From contig BCKQ01000001.1 in assembly GCA_001600695.1 (NCBI GenBank), forward strand, positions 526,577 through 590,576: a stretch of 64,000 bases of DNA, written 5' to 3'. Shown here one piece after another: positions 39,839-60,361 of this stretch; the stretch's first letter is position 1; every line of letters begins with the position of its first letter. The translations under genes were made by a program, and so were the position numbers. This DNA is from Ascoidea asiatica JCM 7603. Taxonomy: Eukaryota; Fungi; Ascomycota. The notes under the pieces were generated by a model. It was not told where the DNA came from, searched no databases, and saw only the letters and a program-made list of their open reading frames with translations.

Positions 39839-39955
39839 TTTTTTTATTTTTCTCTCTTAGCAATATTTTTGAAATGTACATACGATATATATCGTAATTT
39901 ACAATTGTTTTTGCAAACGAATTACTTTGTTCGATAATTATAAGTTATAATATCA

Positions 39956-42010
39956 TCATATATTTCTATTAATCTTTCTTCTAGAAATACAAGTTCTACC
40001 AAATGAATAAGCCAACCCTATCGCAAAATAGAACACCATAAGTATTGAAAATATTATAATGACCATTCTTAATAAATCTCTTGTCTCATCTAGTACTTTA
40101 AAGAACATTGTATTTAGTACTACGGTTGAACTTTGATTTTGATTCAGGGACTCGATGGTACTTGCTTCCCAAGATATATTACCGATTATAAAAATATCTT
40201 CTATCTGAGAGGAGATGCTTTCTTTCAAACTTTCAAACAAAGTTGTTGAATAATCATCACTTTCATCGCTATCAAACCAATCTTCAATGATTTCTGTTGT
40301 TGATTCAATCACTTCTTGGAAAAAATCCTCAAGAATTGAAGAGTATTCAATTTCATTTGTTGCTGAAGATCTTTTTCTTTTGGAAGAATATGATGAAAGA
40401 TCTGTTGAAATGTAATCCATATTTAAAAAATGATTTTTGTAATGTTTGAGATATAAAAAGTTGATTATAAAAAATAAATCAAATTGAAATAGCGTTAAAA
40501 AATTTGAGCCTGAAGGTAAACTGAATAGATAATTTAATAACCAATTAAATTGAATAAAGTAAATTTGACCCAATTTTTGAAATTTTGTTCCAATTCTTTC
40601 AATATTGAGAAGCAAATCAATTGATTTATGTATCAAAGGATTGTTTAAATGGGACATTAAACTTATTGGATCCATTTTTCTTTCTGATCTTTGCAAATCT
40701 TCATTATTATTTTCGTCTTTACTCAAATAAAAACTTCTGAAAGGTAAAGAAACTAAAAAAGAATTTGAATCTTCTTGTTGGATTCTAAAGTTTAGCCAAT
40801 TTATTATCATGTCGGACAGAATTATTAAAAATATTAAACATAGAATTATTATCAAATTTCTTTTAAATAAAGAATTTCCAAGATTTTTAAAATTCAGCTG
40901 AATAGTGGTGCTATTATTATTATCATCATTGATATTATCATCATCGATAACTATTGTACTTGAATTTTTGACAGTGAAGTAATTATCAGAGTTTTTAAAA
41001 CTAGATAGATTCTCATTATATGAATTCCTCAAAAGATCAGTTAAATTTGAAAATTTCTTGTTCAATTTGTTCAAATTTGAAGAATTTGAGGAATATAAAG
41101 AATAATCTGAATCATTCAAATTTAAAATTTTTTTATCAATTGAATTGATTAATTGATTTTTTATTATTTTGGTAGAGTTATTTGCAAAACTTTTGACTTT
41201 TGATAATGCTTTATAATTTGAATCATTGAATGAATTTTTTTCTTCTATTAATAATTCATTTAGATTTGAAATAAATATAGATGATAAATTTTTGAAAGGA
41301 CTATTCAATAAAGAATTTGAATCGATTATAGTTCCATTATTCATCAAAGTATCTATTGTATCACTTAAAGTAGAATCAAAAGAAATTGAATCACTTTCAA
41401 TTGTTGTCAAAGTATCATAAATATTTTTATTTAATTCTGTTAAATTATTTACAATTGTTAAATTTAAATTTGAGAAAGAATTCAATTCAGATTTATTAAA
41501 ACTTTCAAAATTTGATTCAATAGTTGAATAATTAAAATTTATTAAACTTGATAAATTTGAATAATTTATTGAAGGATTGAATTTGTTAATTGAAGATATT
41601 ATTTTATTTAAATAATTAGAATTATTATCTAAAATTTCATTTACTAGGTAATCAGTTTCTTCCGAAATTGCATAAATTGAAGAATTGAAACTTTCTTCAG
41701 ATAAATCCAAGATTAAATTAAATGATTTTTCAGTAGAATTTATAATATTTTCAAATTTTATATAATTCACATACTCTGAAGTAAAATAGTTTTCTGATTC
41801 CAAATTAATAGTAGAATTTGAATTTGAATTGGTTAGGATAGAATAAGATAAATTTGAAAAAAATATTGAAAAAATCTTCAAATTTATAATCAAAATTATA
41901 GCTAAAATTACTCTGAGATTTATAAATGAGTAAGTTAATTTTGATCTTAAACAAAGATATGGAGTTGGAGAGTCTATTCTATTACCTGTTTTTAAATCGA
42001 AATCTAGCAT
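39956..42010 (-). CDS. PRM1: Divergent plasma membrane fusion protein Prm1
   Basis: N-terminal PYLCLRSKLTYSFINLRVILAIILI resembles the Prm1 PYLxLxxRLSQxWxNxxT consensus. Large loop rich in N-glycosylation sequons, internal TM, DPISL...NNP...FNWLLNYLFS segment, C-terminal TM; 684 aa. Confidence 0.7.
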   Translation of the reverse strand: MLDFDLKTGNRIDSPTPYLCLRSKLTYSFINLRVILAIILIINLKIFSIFFSNLSYSILTNSNSNSTINLESENYFTSEYVNYIKFENIINSTEKSFNLILDLSEESFNSSIYAISEETDYLVNEILDNNSNYLNKIISSINKFNPSINYSNLSSLINFNYSTIESNFESFNKSELNSFSNLNLTIVNNLTELNKNIYDTLTTIESDSISFDSTLSDTIDTLMNNGTIIDSNSLLNSPFKNLSSIFISNLNELLIEEKNSFNDSNYKALSKVKSFANNSTKIIKNQLINSIDKKILNLNDSDYSLYSSNSSNLNKLNKKFSNLTDLLRNSYNENLSSFKNSDNYFTVKNSSTIVIDDDNINDDNNNSTTIQLNFKNLGNSLFKRNLIIILCLIFLIILSDMIINWLNFRIQQEDSNSFLVSLPFRSFYLSKDENNNEDLQRSERKMDPISLMSHLNNPLIHKSIDLLLNIERIGTKFQKLGQIYFIQFNWLLNYLFSLPSGSNFLTLFQFDLFFIINFLYLKHYKNHFLNMDYISTDLSSYSSKRKRSSATNEIEYSSILEDFFQEVIESTTEIIEDWFDSDESDDYSTTLFESLKESISSQIEDIFIIGNISWEASTIESLNQNQSSTVVLNTMFFKVLDETRDLLRMVIIIFSILMVFYFAIGLAYSFGRTCISRRKINRNI

Positions 42011-44007: not shown

Positions 44008-45822
44008 CTAGAAATCTGTAAGCAGATAAGTTCCTCTTTTCGCATGCCTTCTATACCAACTAATATCAACAAATCTCAAAATATCCACCGATTCGTTTCT
44101 TGTATATCCACTTTGAGTAGTATCTGACAAACTTTTCACAAATTTTAAATCCTTATTACCTCTAAGATCAAGATACTTTATATTTTTATTAAGAGTTTTT
44201 CCAATCAAAATCGATATGGATTTAATTTTATTATATTGTAAATCTAAAATCTTAAGATTACCTAAATAGCTAAAATTTTTAATTTCACTTAATTCATTTT
44301 TTGAAATAAATAATGATTTCAAATTTACTAAATTATTTAAATTTTCTAAATTTTTAATATGATTTGAATTTAAAAATAATTTCTTTAAGTTAATTAACTC
44401 ATTTAAATATTCTATTTTGGCAATTTGATTTTTTGATAAATCTAAAACTGTGAGATTTTTTAAATTATCTAGATTTTCAATTTTTTTAATTTTATTAGTA
44501 TTTAGATAAAGAATTTTTAAAAATTTAAATGAATCTAATCTACCAATTTTTTCTATTTGATTTAAACTTAAATCTAAAATTTCAAGATTTACTAAATTAC
44601 CTAAATTTTCAATTTCACTTAGATTATTTCCTGAAATGTATAAAGATTTTAAATTTACTAAATCATTTAAATTTTTCAATTTAGATATTTGATTTCCTGA
44701 TAAATTTAAAATTTCAAGATTTTTTAAATTATTTAAATTTTCAATTTTTTCAATTTTATTATTTTGTAAATATAATTTTTTTAAATTAATTAAATAATTT
44801 AAATTTTCTATTTTAACTATTTTATTTCTTGTAAAATTCAAGACCTTTAAATTATCTAGAAGAGAAATTTCATCAGTTAAATTTGAGATAAAATTATCTG
44901 ATAAATCTAAAAATATTAAATTTTTTGGTAAATTTTCTAACACTGAGATTAAAGATTTATTGAAATATAAAACTTTTAAACTTTTAAAACCTTTTAAAAA
45001 ATCAGGGATTATTTTAAATTTTAAACCTTTTAAAGCAATAAATTTTAAATTTGATAAATTTGAGAAATTTGCACAATTGAATAAAAAAGGTTCATCTTGT
45101 TCTGGATTAAAAAATTGCTCACAATATCTAATATATAAATATTCAAGATTTGTACAAAATTTTAAAATATATAAAAAAGTAGCATTTTTTAAGTATGAAT
45201 TTACTAATGTTTTTAAGTATTTACAAGATAATAAAAACTCAATTGAAAAATTAAAATAAGAATCTCCAATAATTTCATAATTTGAAAAATCTCTAAGAGA
45301 TAAAATTTGTCTTGCTTGAGTACCAGAGTTAAATTTAAAATTAAATTCAGTATAATTAGGATATTGAGTATCAGTTACTGAATTTTGATATACAAAATTC
45401 TTTAAATTTTCGAATTGATCTTTTAAATTCAAACTGAAATCTTTTGCAAGAAGAAAAAATTCAAAATCTAATTTTAAATTAGTTATGAAATTTGAATTTT
45501 GTTTAAAAAATTTTGAAATATAAATTATATTATTTTCATTATAAGCTTCTGCGATTTTGAAATAAACAATATTTTTCCACTGATTTTTATCAATTTCTAT
45601 AGATAGTGAAATTGAATTTTTAAGTGATTTCAAAGATTTTAGATTTGTTGGTCTCTCTTTACTTTTATAAAAAATACTAATATTTTTAAAAAGTAAATCT
45701 TTTGAGATATATTGAATTGAATGAATATTACTTAAAGTTAATAACCATAAGATTTTAGAATTTAAATTATTAAATATCTGTCTGATTATTTGGGAATCCA
45801 ATGAATATTCAATTAAAATCAT
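44008..45822 (-). CDS. Putative F-box + SDS22-like LRR protein, copy A (about 604 aa)
   Basis: Start placed at ATG 45822 (MILIEY...) by homology with the paralogs. Degenerate F-box-like LDSQIIRQIFNNLN; 22-aa LxxLxLxxNxIxxIxNL repeats. Confidence 0.85.
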   Translation of the reverse strand: MILIEYSLDSQIIRQIFNNLNSKILWLLTLSNIHSIQYISKDLLFKNISIFYKSKERPTNLKSLKSLKNSISLSIEIDKNQWKNIVYFKIAEAYNENNIIYISKFFKQNSNFITNLKLDFEFFLLAKDFSLNLKDQFENLKNFVYQNSVTDTQYPNYTEFNFKFNSGTQARQILSLRDFSNYEIIGDSYFNFSIEFLLSCKYLKTLVNSYLKNATFLYILKFCTNLEYLYIRYCEQFFNPEQDEPFLFNCANFSNLSNLKFIALKGLKFKIIPDFLKGFKSLKVLYFNKSLISVLENLPKNLIFLDLSDNFISNLTDEISLLDNLKVLNFTRNKIVKIENLNYLINLKKLYLQNNKIEKIENLNNLKNLEILNLSGNQISKLKNLNDLVNLKSLYISGNNLSEIENLGNLVNLEILDLSLNQIEKIGRLDSFKFLKILYLNTNKIKKIENLDNLKNLTVLDLSKNQIAKIEYLNELINLKKLFLNSNHIKNLENLNNLVNLKSLFISKNELSEIKNFSYLGNLKILDLQYNKIKSISILIGKTLNKNIKYLDLRGNKDLKFVKSLSDTTQSGYTRNESVDILRFVDISWYRRHAKRGTYLLTDF

Positions 45823-45929
45823 TTGAGTGTAGTTGAATTGATATTCGATATTTGATATTGGAAATAATAAAAAAAACAGAGATTTATGTGACTTTTCATT
45901 ACCAAGGAGAATTAAGTTACGATGGCTCA

Positions 45930-47110
45930 CATATATATATATATATATATATATATCAATGAAGTTAAATAAGAATCAAATAATAATAATGTTCTAGTTC
46001 CTCTTCTTATAGTTAATTGACTCATGATTGTTTGAGATTTAGTTTCAAAATTTGTACATATTCGTAACAAAATAAGACTCGAGAAATTATCATAGATTAG
46101 TTTGATCTAAGTTTTGAATATAATAAGATAAAATTTGATAAGCACATTGAGATGAGTTGGTCAACAAGATTGATTCCATTAAATATATTATCTTTCCAAG
46201 ATGAACTTCAATAAATATTGTTTATAATGTCTTGATTGCCATGAAAACTTCGTTTGTTTTTTTAAAGCTTCTTTTATTTGTTTTGGTTCTTTGGAAGTAC
46301 CACAGACATGGAACTTATTTGCATAGCAATACCCGCCCGTTTTTTGAGGGTCTTTGAGCCCCGCACTTTAGAATAGAATGCCCGATATATTTAACCACGT
46401 GTTACGTTTTTTAAATAGTTCCACTTTGAAAGGTTACATTTTCAGTAATAATTATCCAGTTTAATCAAGAAGATATTATATTATTATACAAGAAAGAGAA
46501 GTAGAAGAAAAAAATCGAGAGGCAAATAGGCCCTACAAATAGGCCCTACAAATAACAATAGAGCTGAACGATGATTATTATCATTTCACATGTGAATAAA
46601 AATCAGTCTATATAAAGTCTAGCTTTGATAAAAGCCTTTGTCTATTATTCTCAAGGAACAAATAAATTTATGGAATAATAGAAATGCTATTTAATTAAGT
46701 TTAGAGTATATTGGAAAATTCAGGGCACCTCTGCAGCCGTCGGTGAACCTAAACCTTAGTTTTTAGAATCAAATTCACCGACTTTTTTCTTTAAAAAAGG
46801 GTGCGATACTTGTTTATAATAAACTTTATAGGATTGTAAAAGCTTCCCAAAAATATTTATTAGAATAATAGAAAATTGAAAAAACACTTTTGAACCTTTT
46901 TATTCTTCTTTGGATTAATTAATGTAAAATACTTTTTACTCTACAGTATATATAAAATTTTAAATGGGAAAAGTGGTAATTTTACTGAGAGCCATAAAGA
47001 AAAATTGCATTTTTCTTGATTAATGATAGTGGTTATATTTGAAATGAACAATGAAGATTTTTTTTTTTTATTTTTTTGAATTTTAATCTTTGATAGTTTA
47101 TTGAGCTAAT
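45930..47110. repeat. A-B intergenic spacer, homologous to the B-C spacer (49050-50525): segmental tandem duplication
   Basis: Colinear shared blocks: ~46021-46210 vs ~49114-49300, ~46297-46366 vs ~49428-49497, ~46664-46779 vs ~50100-50217, and AATCTTTGATAGTTTATT near both right ends. Confidence 0.9.
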
Positions 47111-47132
47111 CGTGCCTAGGAAATAGAAAACG

Positions 47133-48974
47133 TCAAATCACTTCGCTTTCAATAACAATATTATTTCCCTTAGCTTGACATCTACTATACCAATGTATAT
47201 CAATAAATTTTAAATCATTTGAAATTTTTATTTGTTTAATATTATCTGGTAAATTTTCTAAAACTACTAAGGGATTCCTCCTGAGATCAAGATATTCTAA
47301 ATTTTTTAAATTTATGAAAAATTTTGGGATTTTCTTCAATTTATTAAATTTTAATTTTAAAATTGTTAAATTTGGTACTGAATTAAAAAAATTTTCTAAA
47401 AAATCTAAATTACGACTCTGAAGAAATTCAAGCCTAAATTCTTTTAAATTATTTAGATTTCGAAAACAATTATCATTATCATGAGTTGAAAATAAAATTC
47501 GGTTTCCTGATAAATTTAAAAAGGTAAGATTTTTTAAATTATTAATATTTTCCATTTTTTTAATTTGATTTGAAATAATTTGAAGAGATTTTAAATTTTT
47601 TAATGAATTTAAACCCTTTATTTTCCCAATCCGATTTTTATCGAGATTAAGAAATTTTAAATTTTTCAATGAACTTAATCCATTTATTTCTCTAATTTTA
47701 TTTCTTGATAAATTTAATACTTCAAGATTCTTTAAATTTTTTAAATTTTCTAGTTTTATAATTCTATTTTTTGATAAATCTAAAATTTTAAGATTCTTTA
47801 AATTACTTAAATTTTCAATTATTTGAATTTTATTTCTTTTTAAATATAATTTTTTTAAATTACTTAAATGATTTAAATTTTCAATTTTAATTATTCTATT
47901 TTTTGAAAAATTTAAAACTTCTAGATTATTTAAAAATAACATTTCATTAGTTATAGCTGGGATTCTATTAATAGATAAATCTAAAACAATTAAATTTTCT
48001 GGTAAATTTTTCAATTCTAAAATTGAAGCCGAATTAAAATATAAAACTTTTAAATTTTTAAAAATTTTTAAAAATTCAGGAATTATTATGAATTTGAAAT
48101 TTTTGAGAGCAAGAAATTTCAAATTTGATAAATATCTAATATTTGAAAGATGTAATAATTGTACCATATATGTATACGAATTGAATAAATATAAATATTC
48201 AAGATTTGAAGAAAATTTTAAAAGATTTGAGAATCTAGGATAGGTAAAAAATACATTTACTAATTTTGTTAAATTTTGACAAGATAATAATAAACCTGGA
48301 GAATAATCAAAAATTGAATTTTGAACAAATTCACTATTTGAAAATTCTTTTAGTGATAAAGTTTTTCTTGCTTCAATACCTGAATTGAATTTGTAATTAA
48401 ATTCAATATAATTATGTAGGCTTCGATAATTCAATGAATTTTGATATACAAAATTTCTTAAATTTTCAAATTGATTATTAAAATTTGAATTTATATTTGA
48501 ATTTAAAAATAAATCCTTTAAGATATAAAAAGATTTAAAATCTAATTTTAAATTAGTTATAAAATTTGAGTTTTTTTTGAAAAAGTTTAAATAAAAACTA
48601 AAATTAATTGAATCTAAATTATTTAAATCAAACTCAGTTATTTCTCCTATAGCATTTATGGCATTGAACCTAGAATGTTTAATTAAAATTTTAAAGAAAA
48701 TTGTATTTCTCCAAATATTTTTATCAATTATAAAAGAAAATGAATTTGAATTTTTTTTTAAAGATTCAAATTTTTTATATTTTTTTGATTTGTTTTTTAG
48801 ATTAACGAAAATACTAATGTTTTTAAAAATTAATTCTTTTGAAATATATTGGATAAAATTATTATCACTTAGAGTAAATAACCATAATATTTGAAAATTT
48901 AAATTACTTAATATTTCCCGAAGTAAATTGAATGGTACCGGATACTTGATTAAAATCATTTCCCTAATTTGCAT
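47133..48974 (-). CDS. Putative F-box + SDS22-like LRR protein, copy B (613 aa; alternative start 48959)
   Basis: MILIKYPVPFNLLREILSNLNFQILW F-box-like start, shared middle domain, 22-aa LRRs, C-terminal KFIDIHWYSRCQAK. Confidence 0.88.
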   Translation of the reverse strand: MQIREMILIKYPVPFNLLREILSNLNFQILWLFTLSDNNFIQYISKELIFKNISIFVNLKNKSKKYKKFESLKKNSNSFSFIIDKNIWRNTIFFKILIKHSRFNAINAIGEITEFDLNNLDSINFSFYLNFFKKNSNFITNLKLDFKSFYILKDLFLNSNINSNFNNQFENLRNFVYQNSLNYRSLHNYIEFNYKFNSGIEARKTLSLKEFSNSEFVQNSIFDYSPGLLLSCQNLTKLVNVFFTYPRFSNLLKFSSNLEYLYLFNSYTYMVQLLHLSNIRYLSNLKFLALKNFKFIIIPEFLKIFKNLKVLYFNSASILELKNLPENLIVLDLSINRIPAITNEMLFLNNLEVLNFSKNRIIKIENLNHLSNLKKLYLKRNKIQIIENLSNLKNLKILDLSKNRIIKLENLKNLKNLEVLNLSRNKIREINGLSSLKNLKFLNLDKNRIGKIKGLNSLKNLKSLQIISNQIKKMENINNLKNLTFLNLSGNRILFSTHDNDNCFRNLNNLKEFRLEFLQSRNLDFLENFFNSVPNLTILKLKFNKLKKIPKFFINLKNLEYLDLRRNPLVVLENLPDNIKQIKISNDLKFIDIHWYSRCQAKGNNIVIESEVI

Positions 48975-50559
48975 CTAAAATAACTGTTATATTAAACAAC
49001 AAAAAGTATCTGAAATAGCTTTCATTATTTATAAGGATTAAAAAAACATATATATATATGAAGTTGAGTAATATTCAGATTGAGGTTGAATTTATCTTCT
49101 ACTCATTACTAGACTCTTGATTGTTTGAGATTTAGTATCAAAATTCAAACATATTCGTAACAAAATAAGACTCGAGAAATTATCATTGATTAGTTTGATG
49201 TAAGTTTTGAATAGAACAAGATGAAATTTGACAAATACATTATGATAAATTGATTAGTAAAATTGATTCCATTGAATTTATTATCCTTCGAAGATGAATG
49301 AGAAGAAAAGAAAGCTTATTCAACAATATAACTAAAACTAAAAAAAAAGAAGGTTCAAAGAATTAAGACAATATAAACAATATTTATTTTACTATGCTCG
49401 ATGTATTTTGTCGCCCTGCTTTTGGCCGTACCACAGACATGGCACTTATTTCCATGGCGACAGTCGCCCGTTTTACGAGGGTCAGTCGGCCCCGCACATT
49501 ACAACGGGACCTTCCCAAATCCAGTATAAAATTCCCAATTAGTAAGGTCACATGATATAAATTGTATATTGTACCACTTTTAAAGGTAGCCTGTTTGAAT
49601 TTGATATTTACAGTTTACGTTTGAATTAAAACTAAAGGAATATCAATAATATTCGTAAAAGAAGAAATAAAAATAAAATAATTAAAATATAAAGGATATT
49701 TTCATTTTCTTTTTTACCTGATTTAGGATTTTAAAGAACTAAAACACTAACAATTTCTTCTAAATCTAAGTTTTCACTCTTTAATAAAGTAGCGGTTTTT
49801 GAAAATGAACCAGTTGACCATTCTTGGTTTTTACAATTACCATTTAGTAGTTTTTTCTTTATGATGTTCAATCTTTCCACAAAGTGTAATTCCATTATTT
49901 TCTCAATTTAAACCAATAATAGTTTTATCCTTTAAGACACCTGGAATTGAAACATGTAATTCCTTCCTAATATTGGATAATGCAACTAATAAATTTCATA
50001 TTAATCAATAGATTGTTGAACCAAAAATAGAAAATATAAATTTTAGTTCAGATCTTCTGGAAAAAGCTTTTCTATTTTTACTATTTTCAATGAATTAGGA
50101 AATTTATGAAAAATAATAGATAATTATTTCAATTAAATTTAGAATATTTCAGAAAATTTACTCAGCTTCTGCAGCCGCCGGTGAGCCTAAATCTTATTTT
50201 TTAGAATCGAATTCACCTTAAGTTTGTTTTCAAATAACTGGTAAAGTTTCTTCTTTATAAGAAAAATTAGAAATGACTTTTAAACTTTTATATTCTTCTT
50301 TGGATTTTTAATTGATCTAGGATAATTTTTAGTTCATATTTTGAATTTTCTTATTAAAGAAGTTGAAATTATACTGAGTCATGAGCCAAAAGGCAATTCC
50401 TCTTGATTGTTGAGGGTTGTAACTTGGTGCAAGATTATAACTTTAAAAGAAAACTTTTATGACACTTGTTTTAGAATATATTATAGAAAAAAATCATAGT
50501 AAAATCTTTGATAGTTTATTAAGTTATCTATAACGATATAATGTAATATACTTACGTAT

Positions 50560-52368
50560 TTAGTCTTGTATAACAACATAATTTCTTTTAGCTTGACATC
50601 TACTATACCAATGTATATCAATAAATTTCAAATCACTTGGAATTCTGATTTCTTCAATATCATCTGGTAAATTTTCCAAAATTACTAAAGGATTCTCTCT
50701 AAGATCAAGATATTTTAAATTTTTAAAATTTAAGAAAAATTTTGGTAATTTCTTTATAAGATTCTTTTTTAAAGTTAAAACTGTTAAATTTGTTAATGAA
50801 TTTGAAAAATTTTTTAAAAAATTCAAATTACGAATAAAATTCTCTTGAAGTTTAATTTCCTTTATATTATTTAAGTTTTCAAAACAATTATCATCATTAC
50901 TTGAAGTAGAAATTTCATTAAAATTAAAATTAAAATTTATATATTCTAAATTTTTTAAATTATTAATATTCTCAATTTTTGTAATGGAATTGCTTTTAAG
51001 ATAAAGAACTTTTAAATTTTTTAATGAATTTAACCCACTTAGTTTTTTAATTCTGTTTTTTGATAAATTTAACACTTTAAGATTAATTAAATTATTTAAA
51101 TTTTCTAGTTTTTTGATTCTATTTTTTGATAAATCTAAAAATTTTAGATTATTTAAGTTATTTAAAATTCCAATATTATCAATTTTATTATTTTGTAAAT
51201 ATAATTTTTTTAAATTAATTAAATAATTTAAATTTTCTATTTTAACTATTTTATTTCTTGTTAAATTCAAGACTTTTAAATTATCTAAAAGAAAAATTTC
51301 ATTGGATATTATTGAGATATTATTATATGATAAATCTAAAAAAATTAAATTTTGTGGTAAATTTTTTAAAATTGAAATTAAAGCATAATTAAGATATAAA
51401 ATTTTTAAATTTTTGAAATTTTTGAAAAATTCAGGAATTATTCTAAATTTTAATTTTTCTAAATTAAGAAATTTTAAATTTAATAAATTCTCAAAATTAG
51501 TAAGATCTAATGGATAAAATCTATATGTATAAGTATATGATAAATATAAATATTCAAGATTTGAACAAAATTTTAAAAGATCTAAAAATTTATAATATCT
51601 TAAATATATATTTGTTAATTTAGTTAAATTTTGACAAGATAATAATAAACCTGGAGAAAAATTAAAATTTGAATTTTTTATAATATCATTATTTGAAAAT
51701 TCTTTAACTGATAAAGTTTTTCTTGCTTCAAAACCAGAATTGAATTTATAATTTAATTCAAAATGATTTCTATGTAAACTTTGGTCCATTGTATCTTGAT
51801 ATATAAAATTTTTTAAATTTTCAAATTGATTATTAAAATTTGGATTTATATTTGAATTTAAAAAAAATTTTTTTAAGATATAAAAAGATTTTAAATCTAA
51901 TTTTAAATTGGTTATAAAATTTGATTTTTTTTTGAAAAAGTTTGAATAAAAATTAAAATTAATTGAATTAAAATTAATTGAATTAAATTTATTTAAATTA
52001 TTTGAATTTCTTAATTTATAAAAATTGATATCATTAATTATAATTTCAAAAAAAGTAGTATATTTCCAAATATTTTCATCAATTATAAAAGAAAATGAAT
52101 CTGAAATTTTGATTGAAGATTTGAAATTTTTGAAAATTTTGAAATTTTTTAAATTGTTAAATTTTTTAAATTTTTTAAAATTTTCAAGTATAATTGATTT
52201 ATTTTTTAAATTAGCAAAAATACTTGTGGTTTTAAAAAATAAAACTTTTGAAATACTTTGAAAGAAATTATTATCACTTAAAGTAAATAACCGTAATATT
52301 TGAGAATTTAAATTACTAAATATTTCTCGAATTATATGGACAGGTACTTGATACTTAATTAAGATCAT
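50560..52368 (-). CDS. Putative F-box + SDS22-like LRR protein, copy C (602 aa)
   Basis: MILIKYQVPVHIIREIFSNLNSQIL F-box-like start; closest paralog of B; same C-terminal KFIDIHWYSRCQAK. Confidence 0.88.
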   Translation of the reverse strand: MILIKYQVPVHIIREIFSNLNSQILRLFTLSDNNFFQSISKVLFFKTTSIFANLKNKSIILENFKKFKKFNNLKNFKIFKNFKSSIKISDSFSFIIDENIWKYTTFFEIIINDINFYKLRNSNNLNKFNSINFNSINFNFYSNFFKKKSNFITNLKLDLKSFYILKKFFLNSNINPNFNNQFENLKNFIYQDTMDQSLHRNHFELNYKFNSGFEARKTLSVKEFSNNDIIKNSNFNFSPGLLLSCQNLTKLTNIYLRYYKFLDLLKFCSNLEYLYLSYTYTYRFYPLDLTNFENLLNLKFLNLEKLKFRIIPEFFKNFKNLKILYLNYALISILKNLPQNLIFLDLSYNNISIISNEIFLLDNLKVLNLTRNKIVKIENLNYLINLKKLYLQNNKIDNIGILNNLNNLKFLDLSKNRIKKLENLNNLINLKVLNLSKNRIKKLSGLNSLKNLKVLYLKSNSITKIENINNLKNLEYINFNFNFNEISTSSNDDNCFENLNNIKEIKLQENFIRNLNFLKNFSNSLTNLTVLTLKKNLIKKLPKFFLNFKNLKYLDLRENPLVILENLPDDIEEIRIPSDLKFIDIHWYSRCQAKRNYVVIQD

Positions 52369-53449
52369 TTCATTAAGTTGAATTGAATTGAATTGAATTG
52401 AATTGAATGTAATTATTATATTAAATAACCGGAATTTGAAAAGATCTCATTGTTAATAAGGATTGATTTAACTTATATAGATATAAATGATGTTGGATAG
52501 TAATCAAATTATATTTTGATTCATCATCTTATTGTTTAATTGATTCATTATTGTTTGATTCATCGTTGTTTGAATTTGAATTTAGACATATTCATAACAA
52601 TAAAGAAACATAAGAAATCATGATTGATTACTCTGGTGCAATAACTTGACTAACTTGGTTCCATTGATTGAATTCATTGAGTTCATTGAGTTGATTGAGT
52701 TCATTGAGTTCATTTAATACTTTCTTCTTGCTGACTGAAATAACTGCAAATATAACAAAATATCATTGTTTATTTCTTGTTTATCTCTTGTTTACTTTTA
52801 CTTCTTTGTTTACTTTCTTGTATATTTCCAAAAAACAGGTGCACGTGATCCCTTCGGCTTTGGGATCTCCTTTGATTTTTTCGGGGTCTTTTTGTAAATT
52901 TCTGACCCGAGAAAAACTTCTTCGGGGTCCTTGTTGTTTTTGCAGAAATGGGATTAAAAATGGGACTAAAAACGGTAACAAATTCTCAATTACTTTCACC
53001 GGTGCCAAAAGATTCAAAAATATAAAATAAAATACTCTAATATAATATAATATAATATAATATAATATAATATAATATAACAAAATGATATATAATTTTA
53101 CCTTCTAAGGACAAACTAAACTTAAGAGATTTAGTGTCTAGAATAAATTCAATTCAATCAAAATCAGTCCACGATGACATGAATATCATAGAGATTATTA
53201 ATCTTGATTTGCAATTATTCAATTGATTTTGCTAAAGCTTGTCAAGTGTTTATGGATGATGTTTTATCCTTTATCTATCAATGAAATAAAATACAGTCTC
53301 AGTCTCAGTCTCAGTCAATACTCTAAGTAATATTGTAACTTATTAATATTAAAACTCTTATTATTTAATTCTATATTCCAATACTTAAACAATTATTTAT
53401 ATAAGAGAAATGAAAAGAAAATCAGTATTTTAATATACTCATAAATCAT

Positions 53450-55726
53450 TTAAGTAATTAAAATTTTTCGAATTAAAAACTCAGGTCCAAAAGATTTTAT
53501 AGTTCTTGGAATTTTAACTTTTTCAATATTTTTTGGAAGATTTTCAATAGCTATTAAAGAACTATTTCCTCTAACATTGAGGATTTTTAAACTTTCAACA
53601 TATCTCATAATATTTGAAATATTTTTAATATTATTATTTTCTAAATTTAAATTTCTTAATTTTGATAATGGATTACAAAAATTAATTAAAAAAATTAAAT
53701 CAACAATATAATTATTTGAAAGATTAATTTTTCTTAAATTATTTAAATTTTTAAACGCATATTTATCTTCATGAACATTTTTTGAAATTGAAATTTGATT
53801 TCCTGATAAATCTAAAACTATAAGATTTTTTAAATTTTCTAAATTTTCAATTTTTTTAATTTCATTCATATTAAGATAAAGACATTTTAAAAATTTTAAT
53901 GAATTTAATCCTTCAATTTTCTTAATTTGATTTGAACTTAAATCTAAGATTTCAAGATTTATTAAATTATTTAAATTTTCAATTTCATTTAAATAATTTT
54001 TTGAGATAAATAGAGATTTTAGATTTACTAAATCATTCAAATTTTCTAATTTGACTATTTGATTTGAATTTAAAAATAATTTCTTTAAATTAATTAACTT
54101 ATTTAAATTTTCTAATTTAATTATTTCATTTTCTGATAAATCTAAAACTGTGAGATTTTCTAAATTATTTAAATTTTCAATTTTTTTAATCTTATTTTTA
54201 TTAAGATAAAGAGATTTTAAAAATTTTAATGAATTTAAACCATTAATTTTTTTAATTTTATTAGTATTTAGATAAAGAATTTTTAAAAATTTTAATGAAT
54301 CTAATCCACCAATTTTTTCTATTTGATTTGAACTTAAATCTAAGATTTCAAGATTTTTTAAATTATTTAAATTTTCAATTTCATTTAAATTACTTTCTGA
54401 AATATATAAAGTTTTTAAATTTACTAAATTATTTAAATTTTCTAATTTATAAATTCTAGTTTCTATTAAAATTAATTTTTTTAAATTAATTAACTCATTT
54501 AAATTTTCTAATTTATTTATTACATTTTTTGATAAATTTAAAAGTGTAAGTTTTTTTAAATTATTTAAATTTTCAATTTTTTCAATTTCATTATCTTGTA
54601 AATATAATCTTTTTAAATTTTTTAAATTATTAATATTTTCTATTTTATCTATAAGATTAGAAGATAAATCTAAAACTTTTAAATTATTTAAAATAGAAAT
54701 TTCATTATTTATAATTGAAATAGAATTATCAGATAAATTTAAAAAAATTAAATTTATTGGTAAATTTTCTAAAATTGAAATTTTAGAATTATTAAGATAT
54801 AAGATTTTTAAATTTATAAAATTTTTTAAAAAATCAGGAATTTTTTTAAATTCAAAATTTTCTAAAGATAAATATTTTAAATTTGATAAATTTTTAAAAT
54901 TTTTAAAATTTTTTGAATAATTAATAGAATTAAATTGATTAAAATTAATAATTCTAAGATCTAAATATTCAAGATTTAAACAATTTTTTAAAATATATAA
55001 AAATTCAGGTATTCTTAAATATAAATTTATTAATTTTTTTAAAAAAATACATGAATTAAAAAATTGTAAAGAAAAATCAAAATTTATATTTTCAATAATT
55101 TGATAATTTGAAAATTCTTCAAGTGATAAAATTTTTCTTGCTTCAAAACCGGAATTAAAATTATAATTAAATTCAATATAATTTGTATTAAAATTATAAA
55201 TTGAAGAATGTTGAAATACAAAATTTTTTAAATTTTGAAATTGATTATTAAAATTTGGATTAATATATGAAATTGAATTTAATTTTAAAAAAAAAAGTTT
55301 TAAAATTGAGAAAGATTGAAAATCTAATTTTAAATTAGTTATAAAATTTGAATTTTTTTTAAAAAAAGATGAAAAAAAATTATAAAAATTTAAAGAATTT
55401 GGTTCTTCATTTCTTGATTTTAAAAAAATTAAATTTTTCCAATTATTTTTATTATAATTATTATCAATTAATAAAGAAATTGAATCTGATTTTCTTTTAA
55501 TTAATAAATTTTTATTTAAAAAAGATAATTTTTTTAATAATTTTTTATTTTTTGAAAATGATTTTAAATTATAAATAATACTAATTTTTTTAAAAATTAA
55601 ATCTTTTGAGATATATTGAATAAAATGAATATCACTTAAAGTAAATAACCATAAAATTTGATTATTTAAAATTATGAATATTTTTTTAATTAATTCATAA
55701 GGTAATTGATACTTAATTAAGATCAT
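53450..55726 (-). CDS. Putative F-box + SDS22-like LRR protein, copy D (758 aa)
   Basis: MILIKYQLPYELIKKIFIILN gives the best match to the F-box LPxEL..IF..L consensus; longest LRR array, with internal higher-order duplication. Confidence 0.9.
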   Translation of the reverse strand: MILIKYQLPYELIKKIFIILNNQILWLFTLSDIHFIQYISKDLIFKKISIIYNLKSFSKNKKLLKKLSFLNKNLLIKRKSDSISLLIDNNYNKNNWKNLIFLKSRNEEPNSLNFYNFFSSFFKKNSNFITNLKLDFQSFSILKLFFLKLNSISYINPNFNNQFQNLKNFVFQHSSIYNFNTNYIEFNYNFNSGFEARKILSLEEFSNYQIIENINFDFSLQFFNSCIFLKKLINLYLRIPEFLYILKNCLNLEYLDLRIINFNQFNSINYSKNFKNFKNLSNLKYLSLENFEFKKIPDFLKNFINLKILYLNNSKISILENLPINLIFLNLSDNSISIINNEISILNNLKVLDLSSNLIDKIENINNLKNLKRLYLQDNEIEKIENLNNLKKLTLLNLSKNVINKLENLNELINLKKLILIETRIYKLENLNNLVNLKTLYISESNLNEIENLNNLKNLEILDLSSNQIEKIGGLDSLKFLKILYLNTNKIKKINGLNSLKFLKSLYLNKNKIKKIENLNNLENLTVLDLSENEIIKLENLNKLINLKKLFLNSNQIVKLENLNDLVNLKSLFISKNYLNEIENLNNLINLEILDLSSNQIKKIEGLNSLKFLKCLYLNMNEIKKIENLENLKNLIVLDLSGNQISISKNVHEDKYAFKNLNNLRKINLSNNYIVDLIFLINFCNPLSKLRNLNLENNNIKNISNIMRYVESLKILNVRGNSSLIAIENLPKNIEKVKIPRTIKSFGPEFLIRKILIT

Positions 55727-56555: not shown

Positions 56556-56656
56556 TCTCCCGGGGGTGAGTCGAACACCCGATCTCAAGATTACTTTGTA
56601 TACTCACAAAGTGAAACATTACAGTCTCGCGCCTTAGCCAGCTTGGCCACCGGGAG
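56556..56656 (-). tRNA. tRNA-Tyr (GTA) with a 27-nt intron (56592-56618)
   Basis: Exon 1 CTCCCGGTGGCCAAGCTGGCTAAGGCGCGAGACTGTAA and exon 2 ATCTTGAGATCGGGTGTTCGACTCACCCCCGGGAGA; C1:G72 and A73 identity elements; intron at canonical 37/38; T7 terminator at 56545-56551. Confidence 0.97.
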
Positions 56657-57640
56657 TGTTTTTCTGTTTTTTTGTTTTTCAGAATTACTATTAACTTCAA
56701 TATCCCACAATAAACAATTTGTTGTTGACTCGGATAATTTATACGAAGTGCCCTGTGGGGGTTTGCAAGTTTTCTTTAATCGCTACGCAGCGCGGTTTTA
56801 TTCTGCTGCGCAAAGCAGGGGTAATAAAAGACACAATGACAAAGACCACCGTAGAGTACGTTGACTAGAACTTTGTAATTTGGTCCAACATTTATTAAAG
56901 TTACAATGCATATAATGCATACTTTGGATCTGAGGAGAGTAAAGAATACCGAGGGGGAAAAAAACAAAATTACCTAATCAGGTAATATAAACTGTTTTTC
57001 ACCACTGATGTGGCTAGTGCCGGTCAAGACCGACTGCTTTTTCTTTTCTAGCCAATTAAAATGTCGCTCGCTAGAATCTCAAAACGGGGAATTACCAAAT
57101 TCATCAATATCACACAAAACTTATAATTCCTTAACAATTTGAAAAAATGTGAATGATTACGAAAATAAATTAATAAATTAATAAAAGTTTATTTCAATTT
57201 TGACTCCAAGAATTATTACTTACTTTAATAACATATTTACTTATCAATGATCACTATATACTATATATGATAAGAAATGAAGAAATGATCAATCCTTTAT
57301 ATGTATTTAATGATTGTATTATCTTTTACTTACTTACATAATATCAGATTTGAGTGAATTAAAATTGACTTTTTACAATATATATAGTATAATATGTAAT
57401 ATAATATATAATATAATATACAACACATAGTATTTTGAAATAAATTAAAACTATTCTTACTTCATAATCTTACTCAGGATATACAACTTAGACTAATAAA
57501 CTAATCTTTGTTTTAGCTTATCAATGATATCATTACCACTTTTTTAAAATATATTGATGATTCTGAGTTTCAAACTTTCTTGAAAATACTTCATCATGAT
57601 TGGTGAATTTATAAATATTTCGACTATTTCATTTCATTTC

Positions 57641-57770
57641 AATTCATTTCAATTCATTTCAATTCATTTCAATTCATTTCAATTCATTTCAATTCATTTC
57701 AATTCATTTCAATTCATTTCAATTCATTTCAATTCATTTCAATTCATTTCAATTTATTTCAATTTATTTC
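57641..57770. repeat. Decamer minisatellite (AATTCATTTC)x11 plus 2 variant units
   Basis: Read directly: perfect units at 57641-57750, then AATTTATTTC x2. Confidence 0.95.
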
Positions 57771-58663: not shown

Positions 58664-60361
58664 ATGAAATCTTTAAATTCTTTTGAAATATCTCATATAA
58701 AAATAGATGATTATAAATCTATAATACCCTATGATTCAATAGAAAAAGGGTTAAATTTTAAAAATTTAGAAAATTTTATTCAAAATGATAATATTAATAG
58801 TATTTTTATTAAAAAATTAAAAAATTTATCTCCAAATCTTATTAAACAAATAGTCAAATATCTTCCAATTGAATTAATTCATTTTTTATCATATTCAAAA
58901 ATCTCAATAATTAGAGAAATCTCAATTAAAAAATTATATGAATCTTTGATTATTTGTGAAGATGATGATGATGATGATGGTGACAATGATGATGACAATG
59001 ATGAAGATAATGATGAAGATAACGATGATGATGATGATAATGATGGTAAATTAATTCTTAATCCTGGTGATGATATTTTTAAACATTCAACTGAAGCTCA
59101 AATTATTGATTTAAATGATTATGAATATATTCCATTAGCTAAAAAATTAAATATAAATATTGAATCTAAAATTCTTAAACAATTATTCTTTAGTTTTTCT
59201 TCTAAATTTATTTTCTCAAATTTAATTTCAATAAATATTTGTGATCGAAATTGGCAAGATAATTTTGAAGAAAATTGGTCATTTATAAGATTTTTAACAA
59301 ATTCAAAAAATTTTCCAAGATTAAAATCTTTAAAATTAATTGGTAATGAAATTAAATTTGATTATGATATAAATTTTAATTATAATTTTAATTTAAATTT
59401 ATTTAAAAATTTCTTAAATTTAACAAATTTAAATTTATCTGGTAATAGATTTACATCTAATGATTTAAAACCATTAAGTGATTTAAAAAATTTAATTAAA
59501 TTAAATATTTCTGAAAATTATTTTTTCGCTTATAAAAAACAAAACTCTATAAGTTTTGATTTCTTAAATAATTTAATTAATTTAAATTATTTAAACCTTT
59601 CTGATAATTATATTTCTGAAATTCCTTTAAATTTAGAATTTTTAACTAAATTAAAAACTTTAGATTTATCTTCAAATAAAATAAGTAAAATTGAAAATTT
59701 AAAAAACTTATCTTCACTTATTAAATTAGATTTATCATTTAATAAAATTCTTGAAATCTCAGATGATTTATTATATCTTTCAAATTTAAAAATATTAAAT
59801 TTACATAAAAATTCAATTAATAAAATTCAAAATGTAAAAAATCTTAAAGATTTAATAAATTTAAATTTAGCTTTCAATAATTTAACTAAAATTGAAAATA
59901 TTTCATTTCTAGAAAATTTAAGAAAATTGATCTTATCAAATAATCAAATTAATCTTTCAAATAACAATAATAATAATGACAATAATAATACAATTAATCT
60001 CAATAATAAAAAGAATAAGAATAATGAATCAGAATTCCCATTACTTCCTTTAAAAGATAAATTAGAAGTTTTATCTATAAATAACAATGAACTCACCAAA
60101 CTTCCAAAATATTTCAATCATTTCAAAAATTTAAAATATTTAGATTTATCATTCAATCCAATTCAATTAACTGAATTTCAAGAAATTTGTGATTTTCCAA
60201 GAGATGTTAAAGTTATTAATTTTATTGGTATTCATTTAAATGAAATGCATGTAAGTTATATTAATAATTTTTGTAGTAATATAAGAATTTCAAATAACTC
60301 AACTTATCAAAAAAATAGTACTTTGAAATTACCACTTCTTAAAAGAAGAAGATTTCAATAG
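58664..60361 (+). CDS. Putative F-box + LRR protein, divergent copy E (565 aa) with acidic tract
   Basis: LKNLSPNLIKQIVKYLPIELIHFLS..IREISIKKLYE F-box-like segment, Asp-rich tract, then about 11 LRRs. LPKYFNHFKNLKYLDLSFNP parallels LPKFFLNFKNLKYLDLRENP in copy C. Confidence 0.85.
   Translation: MKSLNSFEISHIKIDDYKSIIPYDSIEKGLNFKNLENFIQNDNINSIFIKKLKNLSPNLIKQIVKYLPIELIHFLSYSKISIIREISIKKLYESLIICEDDDDDDGDNDDDNDEDNDEDNDDDDDNDGKLILNPGDDIFKHSTEAQIIDLNDYEYIPLAKKLNINIESKILKQLFFSFSSKFIFSNLISINICDRNWQDNFEENWSFIRFLTNSKNFPRLKSLKLIGNEIKFDYDINFNYNFNLNLFKNFLNLTNLNLSGNRFTSNDLKPLSDLKNLIKLNISENYFFAYKKQNSISFDFLNNLINLNYLNLSDNYISEIPLNLEFLTKLKTLDLSSNKISKIENLKNLSSLIKLDLSFNKILEISDDLLYLSNLKILNLHKNSINKIQNVKNLKDLINLNLAFNNLTKIENISFLENLRKLILSNNQINLSNNNNNNDNNNTINLNNKKNKNNESEFPLLPLKDKLEVLSINNNELTKLPKYFNHFKNLKYLDLSFNPIQLTEFQEICDFPRDVKVINFIGIHLNEMHVSYINNFCSNIRISNNSTYQKNSTLKLPLLKRRRFQ

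What the first reader, a model, noticed from the sequence alone, without database searches (positions are those of the whole stretch)
44479..54356. Mosaic LRR modules: patchwise sequence exchange between non-adjacent paralogs
Seen: A 44751-44832 is identical over 82 bp to C 51180-51261 (TRNKIVKIENLNYLINLKKLYLQNNKI). About 160 bp away, A 44479-44590 instead matches D 54245-54356 (4 mismatches in 112 bp). B 47170-47210 is identical to C 50588-50628. The genes are otherwise clearly diverged, so copy A is C-like in one module and D-like in another. Inference: gene conversion or unequal crossover shuffles 66-bp LRR units, giving combinatorial binding surfaces as in NLR clusters.
Basis: partly seen in the sequence, partly recalled or inferred. 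Interest (0 to 1): 0.8.

Follow-up and report, generated by a model that had tools for sequence, protein, structure and literature searches.

The report
Gene conversion in yeast LRR cluster
In the yeast Ascoidea asiatica, one of four neighbouring F-box-like, leucine-rich-repeat genes shares two short (about 110-base) near-identical stretches with two different neighbours; this is a real but ordinary case of gene conversion between duplicated genes, not a dedicated shuffling system.

Summary
All three matches are in the sequence as stated. The genome is almost certainly Ascoidea asiatica. A-D are intronless tandem paralogs: a weak F-box-like start, a family-specific domain and SDS22-type 22-aa LRRs, members of a family with at least 42 loci. 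Two tracts are true outliers: A-C (113 bp, 3 mismatches, 83 exact; permutation p<=1e-4; 0 of 3000 no-exchange simulations) and A-D (112 bp, 4 mismatches). Background divergence is 26-28%, and synonymous differences are also low (3 vs 10-12 expected). The B=C 41-mer is no evidence: B and C are sister genes, and unrelated LRR genes here share 42 bp. Among 946 pairs of LRR ORFs only these two tracts stand out, and both involve A. They join equivalent units and end mid-unit. Whole-unit gain and loss (66-bp steps) is real. So A is a mosaic made by rare ectopic conversion plus unequal crossover; direction is unresolved. 'Combinatorial, NLR-like' is not shown: no NOD domain, no clear positive selection, little repeat homogenisation. 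The scan had noted this cluster before (same DNA). Side find: three Skp1 genes.

The parts
44008..45822 (-). Gene A, 604 aa from the ATG that aligns with B-D (the ORF finder's GTG start is 45930): F-box-like start, family domain, LRRs; the mosaic copy
47133..48959 (-). Gene B, 608 aa (an in-frame ATG lies 5 codons upstream at 48974); sister of C
   Evidence: B+C bootstrap 100
50560..52368 (-). Gene C, 602 aa; AlphaFold model is an LRR solenoid from about residue 250, first 132 residues low confidence
53450..55726 (-). Gene D, 758 aa, with 14 canonical 22-aa units and an internally duplicated 5-unit super-repeat (copies 13.6% diverged)
44750..44862 (-). A side of conversion tract 1 (end of cap unit, unit 1, first half of unit 2); 3 mismatches to C in 113 bp; exact over 44750-44832
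51179..51291 (-). C side of tract 1 (same unit positions)
44479..44590 (-). A side of conversion tract 2 (unit 5 and first half of unit 6); 4 mismatches to D in 112 bp
54245..54356 (-). D side of tract 2 (unit 6 and first half of unit 7)
44257..44685 (-). D-like block of A (units 3b-9), collinear with D units 4b-11 apart from one unit missing in A; 55 mismatches in 429 bp; shared ancestry of the long array or an older exchange
47170..47210 (-). B side of the 41-bp B=C match, in the conserved C-terminal motif; explained by sister-gene ancestry
50588..50628 (-). C side of the 41-bp match
45613..45822 (-). First 70 codons of A, holding the F-box-like motif (same motif at the starts of B, C, D)
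45947..46205 (.). Upstream block of A, 80% identical to the block upstream of B (49048-49298) and 71% to that of C: gene plus promoter were duplicated together
   Evidence: exact 38-mer 46056-46093 = 49149-49186
58664..60361 (+). Gene E, a distant member of the same F-box-like LRR family, divergently transcribed; no exchange tract with A-D

Best explanation
A-D arose by tandem duplication of an intronless F-box-like LRR gene with its promoter (shown by homology). Their LRR arrays then gained and lost whole 66-bp units by unequal crossover or slippage (shown: 4 to 14 canonical units in the six close paralogs, always in frame; hybrid units; a 5-unit super-repeat in A and D). After the copies had diverged by about a quarter, ordinary homologous repair used a neighbour 6.4 kb (C) or 9.8 kb (D) away as template at least twice, overwriting about 110 bp, or 1.7 LRR units, in register (inferred from statistics; direction not resolved, though two events sharing A make A the likelier recipient). 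The AT-rich, internally repetitive LRR DNA offers the longest near-identical stretches between diverged copies, which is probably why the tracts fall there (inference). The proteins most likely act as substrate receptors of SCF ubiquitin ligases, with the LRR concave face binding substrates (inferred from architecture; not tested). Conversion replaces several variable surface residues at once, but nothing shows that this is selected or frequent.
For:: 38 consecutive polymorphic sites identical in A and C, global p=1e-4 (6e-4 within the LRR part only); no other pair significant; no-exchange simulation on the fitted tree gives a longest exact run of 60 and at least 5 mismatches per 113 bp in 3000 runs; grafting A onto C raises lnL by about 24; among 946 pairs of 44 LRR ORFs the best 99-nt windows are A-C (2 mismatches) and A-D (3); next is the sister pair B-C (7), the rest 10 or more; 3 synonymous differences in both tracts vs 10.3-12.1 expected; 1 and 3 amino-acid differences in 37 vs a 37% LRR background; in the tract-2 block A differs from D's first copy by 4 of 99 while D's own two copies differ by 12; the N-terminal tree puts B with C (100), and trees joining A with C are rejected there (AU p<0.001). 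F-box.
Against: A free-branch topology test on tract 1 alone does not separate the trees; only 3 sites are private to A and C. The synonymous signal of each tract alone is modest (p 0.005-0.10) because codon bias leaves few informative sites. Against the 12.8% mean of the A-D block, tract 2 has only p=0.017-0.033. (A,D) as sister genes is not rejected by the N-terminal data (AU p=0.16), so the wider D-likeness of A may be descent. F-box scores of A-D themselves are below Pfam's cut-off.
Confidence: 0.8

Rival explanations
1. No exchange: A and C (and A and D) kept ancestral, consensus-like LRR sequence under shared constraint, and extreme AT codon bias turned amino-acid identity into DNA identity.
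For: GC3 is 4-11%; same-amino-acid codons are identical 75-90% of the time between any paralogs; unrelated LRR genes share up to 42 bp and units as close as 7-8 mismatches in 66; the free-branch test on tract 1 is flat.
Against: The identical stretch includes positions that differ in 3-4 of the other four paralogs. Permutation conditional on polymorphic sites and simulation with rate variation both reject it. Synonymous differences are below the composition-adjusted expectation. Tract 2 covers an unusual, non-consensus unit.
Confidence: 0.08
2. An adaptive, recurrent diversification system: a yeast F-box-LRR receptor repertoire that reshuffles LRR units to recognise foreign proteins, like plant type I NB-LRR genes, Podospora HNWD repeats or the nematode F-box expansion.
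For: At least 42 family loci; three Skp1 genes; surface positions 8, 10 and 12 of the unit change in 15-17 of 21 unit pairs while core positions barely change; a perfect 219-bp internal repeat in another member; no relatives of the N-terminal domain outside this genome.
Against: Only two tracts in 946 pairs; paralogs 19-31% diverged; no homogenised repeats apart from one gene; concave-face pN/pS 0.264/0.239, no clear excess; no NACHT gene in the genome; no population or expression data.
Confidence: 0.15
3. Assembly artefact: short-read assembly or polishing merged similar LRR paths and copied sequence between A and its neighbours.
For: Draft assembly in 71 pieces; AT-rich repetitive DNA; reads not examined.
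Against: Both tracts carry scattered mismatches (3 and 4), stay in frame, and are short enough to be spanned by single reads with unique flanks; the window has no N. Collapsing needs near-identity to begin with.
Confidence: 0.05

Closest known systems
Ectopic (non-allelic) gene conversion between clustered paralogs, e.g. F-box genes Fbxo6/Fbxo44 in primates (PMC3984280)
   Same: Short GENECONV-type tracts between tandem F-box paralogs that conflict with the gene tree.
   Different: Here the tracts lie in LRR units of a lineage-specific yeast family and are only about 110 bp; one strain only.
Type I plant NB-LRR clusters (rice Pi2/9, lettuce RGC2; PMC3492116)
   Same: Tandem LRR genes, sequence exchange, discordant unit trees, variable surface residues.
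   Different: No NB-ARC domain; 2 events rather than dozens (77 reported for Pi2/9); no Ka/Ks>1 shown; no known ligand.
Fungal NLR repeat domains under concerted evolution (Podospora HNWD; PMC4986451)
   Same: Repeat exchange within and between family members, repeat-number variation.
   Different: Those are NACHT/NB-ARC proteins with WD/ANK/TPR repeats over 85% identical internally, and no LRR; here internal unit identity is mostly 65-85% and the genome has no NACHT hit.
Yeast F-box LRR substrate receptors Das1 and Ydr131c (bioRxiv 10.64898/2026.05.13.724490); SDS22-class LRRs
   Same: N-terminal F-box followed by an LRR solenoid; 22-residue units resemble SDS22, internalin and Leptospira LRRs.
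   Different: No sequence link to Das1 was found or tested directly; the ~200-aa N-terminal part has no detectable relative outside this genome; the family is expanded to at least 42 loci.
Caenorhabditis F-box and Skp1-related expansion (PMC12919956)
   Same: Many fast-evolving F-box adaptors together with extra Skp1 genes.
   Different: Far smaller (about 42 and 3 vs 300-500 and 23); no functional link to infection shown.

Membership tests
Ectopic gene conversion tract | Stretch of identity far above the pair's background, after allowing for site constraint | tested here: met
   A-C; A-D. Not met for B-C.
Ectopic gene conversion tract | Lower synonymous divergence inside than outside | tested here: met
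   3 vs 10.3-12.1 expected, p 0.0006-0.004 for both tracts together; weak for each alone
Ectopic gene conversion tract | Local tree conflicts with the gene tree | tested here: met
   lnL gain about 24 with branch lengths tied to the background tree; A+C rejected in the N-terminal part; free-branch test on the tract alone is flat
Ectopic gene conversion tract | Non-reciprocal transfer with a known donor | tested here: inconclusive
   C-to-A vs A-to-C differ by about 1 lnL unit
Ectopic gene conversion tract | Present in the DNA, not only in the assembly | not testable with these tools
F-box LRR (SCF substrate receptor) | N-terminal F-box motif | tested here: inconclusive
   Family profile's best PDB hit is the FBXL17 F-box, E=0.003; 5 of 19 members hit Pfam F-box weakly, best E=0.035; two family loci reach the Pfam cut-off in the genome scan; A-D alone do not
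F-box LRR (SCF substrate receptor) | C-terminal LRR solenoid | tested here: met
   Pfam LRR_4/LRR_8 E down to 5e-47; model and Foldseek
F-box LRR (SCF substrate receptor) | Binds Skp1 and brings substrates to Cdc53 | not testable with these tools
   Needs pull-down; Skp1 and cullin genes are present
NLR / NB-LRR | NACHT or NB-ARC domain | tested here: not met
   None in A-E; no NACHT match in the genome; NB-ARC not searched genome-wide
Type I NB-LRR or HNWD-like diversifying repeats | Frequent exchange and high internal repeat identity | tested here: not met
   2 tracts in 946 pairs; only 2 of 44 ORFs have an internal 99-nt repeat above 90% identity
Type I NB-LRR or HNWD-like diversifying repeats | Positive selection at surface positions | tested here: inconclusive
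   Concave-face pN 0.264 vs pS 0.239; positions 8, 10, 12 have pN near 0.5; AT bias distorts pS; pairs not independent
Type I NB-LRR or HNWD-like diversifying repeats | Allelic and copy-number polymorphism among strains | not testable with these tools
   Only one genome available; no relatives offered

The most novel reading that the evidence does not exclude
Ascoidea asiatica has an expanded, recombining repertoire of at least 42 F-box-like LRR receptors plus three Skp1 proteins that works as a ubiquitin-based nonself-recognition system in a budding yeast without NACHT-type NLRs, and LRR conversion and unit gain or loss supply its specificities.
Probability: 0.15. Interest if true: 0.7.

Novelty: new member of a known kind. 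Interest (0 to 1): 0.3.

Why it matters
The exchange itself is textbook paralog gene conversion; it is a clean small example showing that about 110-bp tracts can move between yeast genes that are over 25% diverged when an LRR array offers local similarity. The setting is of more interest than the tracts: an apparently undescribed expansion of F-box-like LRR genes with extra Skp1 copies in a budding yeast (no paper found in 3 targeted searches). If that family were shown to target foreign proteins it would give a yeast parallel to nematode and plant F-box expansions.

Tried and rejected
Word search with the N-terminal 300 aa of C found nothing; the six-gene profile found only generic LRR proteins over 38-51% of the length; the full-library profile search of the N-terminal domain hit only its LRR-like tail, with no hit whose best stretch covers the first 85 positions (the own genome may be left out of these libraries). 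A first exact-match listing was swamped by microsatellites and redone. The unit tree is mostly unresolved at 66 columns (7 strong branches of 41). Free-branch AU test on tract 1: uninformative. Donor direction: unresolved. B=C as a conversion: rejected. A2 being close to D2 (4 of 66): not counted, as it is a consensus-like unit at the orthologous position. Idea that the C6 remnant marks the synteny break with A. rubescens: rejected, the ArfGAP beside it is not the ortholog. A decayed LRR gene left of A: no tblastn hit. The A. rubescens region next to RPC40 shows no LRR gene within 10 kb, but synteny breaks before the cluster, so this says nothing on orthologs.
Full report
Source. The window is C1:526577-590576 of a 20.3-Mb genome in 71 contigs. 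Its RPC40 protein is closest to Ascoidea rubescens at 76%, gene order around it matches A. rubescens, and the published A. asiatica NRRL Y-17576 assembly has 71 records (PMC6041473). I take it to be A. asiatica (inference from these three facts). Its CUG ambiguity does not matter here: A has one CUG codon, B-D none.

Observation. All three matches are exactly as reported. A=C extends to 83 bp (44750-44832 = 51179-51261) and, with three mismatches, to 113 bp (44750-44862). A and D differ at 4 of 112 positions. B=C is 41 bp.

The genes. A, B, C and D are intronless ORFs of 602-758 aa on the minus strand. Each has about 330 residues of N-terminal sequence, a 23-aa cap unit, a run of canonical 22-aa SDS22-type LRRs and a C-terminal cap. 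The model of C is an LRR solenoid whose best matches are Leptospira LRR proteins, internalin, SHOC2 and SDS22; the first 132 residues are low confidence. The first 50 residues look like an F-box: a 19-member profile has FBXL17's F-box as best PDB hit (E=0.003), five members hit Pfam F-box weakly, and two of the 42 loci found with the profile reach the Pfam cut-off. This is suggestive, not proof. Two close paralogs lie on other contigs (F on C3, G on C12) plus a remnant on C6. Upstream spacers of A, B and C are 67-80% alike in blocks, so genes were duplicated with their promoters. No relative of the N-terminal domain was found elsewhere.

Gene tree. On the N-terminal 376 codons B and C are sisters (bootstrap 100; 81% identical); A, D and (F,G) branch deeper at 68-75%. 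Trees joining A with C are rejected (AU p<0.001); (A,D) as sisters is not (p=0.16).

Tract 1 (A-C). A-C identity jumps from 72% to 97-100% in unit 1 and the first half of unit 2, while B, C's sister, stays near 82%. A GENECONV-type test finds 38 consecutive polymorphic sites identical, global p=1e-4, or 6e-4 when only LRR-region sites are permuted; no other pair is significant. In 3000 simulations without exchange the longest exact run was 60 and the best 113-bp window had 5 mismatches; with branch lengths tied to the background tree, exchange gains about 24 lnL units, but the two directions differ by only 1. The shared stretch includes residues that differ in three or four of the other four paralogs.

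Tract 2 (A-D). A units 3b-9 are collinear with D units 4b-11 and share D's 5-unit super-repeat; they differ at 55 of 429 positions (12.8%), against 26% in the N-terminal part. For other pairs the LRR array diverges 0.72-0.94 times as much as the N-terminus, so 19% or more is expected. The whole block is then too similar (p=5e-4), the 112-bp tract much more so (p about 1e-6 before allowing for the scan), and the block without the tract only marginally (p=0.11 at the most cautious ratio). Against the block's own mean the tract has p=0.017-0.033. So either the tract or the whole block was exchanged; the broader D-likeness may simply be descent from a long-array ancestor.

Codon-bias control. GC3 is 4-11%, so DNA identity follows amino-acid identity closely. 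Using amino-acid-specific background rates, the two tracts hold 3 synonymous differences where 10.3-12.1 are expected (p 0.0006-0.004; tract limits chosen after the fact), and only 1 and 3 amino-acid differences in 37 codons against 37% in other orthologous units.

The B=C match is not evidence. It lies in a conserved C-terminal motif of sister genes; pairwise p=0.05 uncorrected; synonymous divergence is as expected from the N-terminal background (p=0.48); unrelated LRR genes of this genome share 42 bp, and F and B share 43 bp in a conserved N-terminal block.

How general is it? Among 946 pairs of 44 LRR ORFs fetched from the genome, the best 99-nt windows are A-C (2 mismatches) and A-D (3), then B-C (7), then 10 and up. 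Painting A against its paralogs gives own sequence, then C-like (aa 321-358), then D-like (aa 378-510). Both tracts join equivalent units and begin and end inside units. Unit numbers differ among the six close paralogs (4 to 14), always in frame, with hybrid units such as A3 and D7; another member on C9 has a perfect 219-bp repeat with a 198-bp period. Unequal crossover or slippage of whole units is therefore real, while conversion between genes is rare and local.

Selection. Core leucines and asparagines are strongly conserved (pN 0.05 vs pS 0.29); concave-face positions are not (0.264 vs 0.239), and positions 8, 10 and 12 change in 15-17 of 21 unit pairs. This fits either relaxed constraint or diversification; it does not show positive selection.

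Comparison. It works like conversion in clustered F-box genes (Fbxo6/44, PMC3984280) and type I NB-LRR clusters (PMC3492116), at far lower frequency. It is not an NLR: no NOD domain in these genes and no NACHT match in the genome; fungal NLRs use highly conserved WD/ANK/TPR repeats (PMC4986451). The architecture matches yeast F-box LRR receptors such as Das1 (10.64898/2026.05.13.724490), without a shown sequence link. The genome has three Skp1 genes; budding yeasts usually have one (my own knowledge, not checked here), and joint expansion of F-box and Skp1 genes is known from C. elegans (PMC12919956). That keeps a nonself-recognition role possible, but nothing here tests it.

Limits. One strain, no close species.

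Verdict. Observation confirmed, interpretation partly supported: two genuine short conversion tracts make A a mosaic, by a well-known mechanism. Interest 0.3.

Noticed in passing
L053:1122-1622 (+), L055:1063-1596 (-), L054:1377-2294 (-); G000 C1:832.6k, C14:74.1k, C8:211.4k: Three intact Skp1 genes: a canonical 167-aa one, a 178-aa one about 45% identical, and a 306-aa one with an N-terminal extension and acidic insertions. Four cullin-family loci were also found.
   Followed up: partly
G000, 42 loci on many contigs: Family of at least 42 genes with the same F-box-like start, most with SDS22-type LRRs; no outside relative of the N-terminal domain of the A-D subfamily was found.
   Followed up: partly
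L008:2883-3299 (G000 C9, about 670.4-670.8k): Perfect 219-bp internal repeat with a 198-bp period (three LRR units) in another family member: a very recent duplication or an assembly artefact.
   Followed up: partly
L003:2803-3316 (G000 C6, about 29.8-30.3k): Truncated remnant of the A-D subfamily (C-terminal part only, 77% identical to F).
   Followed up: partly
window 56558-56656 (-): Intron-containing tRNA-Tyr gene between D and E, read by eye; the tRNA scan did not list it. A 10-bp tandem repeat lies at about 57633-57754.
   Followed up: no
window 44008-44256 (-): The C-terminus of A lacks about two terminal LRR units present in B, C, D and F, has a 4-residue insertion and higher GC; possibly relaxed constraint on the mosaic copy.
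   Followed up: no
window 36863-42010: Gene order matches A. rubescens from LETM1 to the TBC gene and breaks right after it, just before the Prm1-like gene and the LRR cluster.
   Followed up: partly
L008, L014, L015, L024, L026, L028, L034, L037, L047: Isolated single N bases occur in loci from contigs C9, C10, C27 and C48 but not in this window; perhaps masked heterozygous sites limited to some chromosomes.
   Followed up: no
L017 (G000 C11:571-573.5k), L024, L026 (C10), L016 (C3): Several distant family members are split over two reading frames or truncated, consistent with birth-and-death turnover or assembly errors.
   Followed up: no
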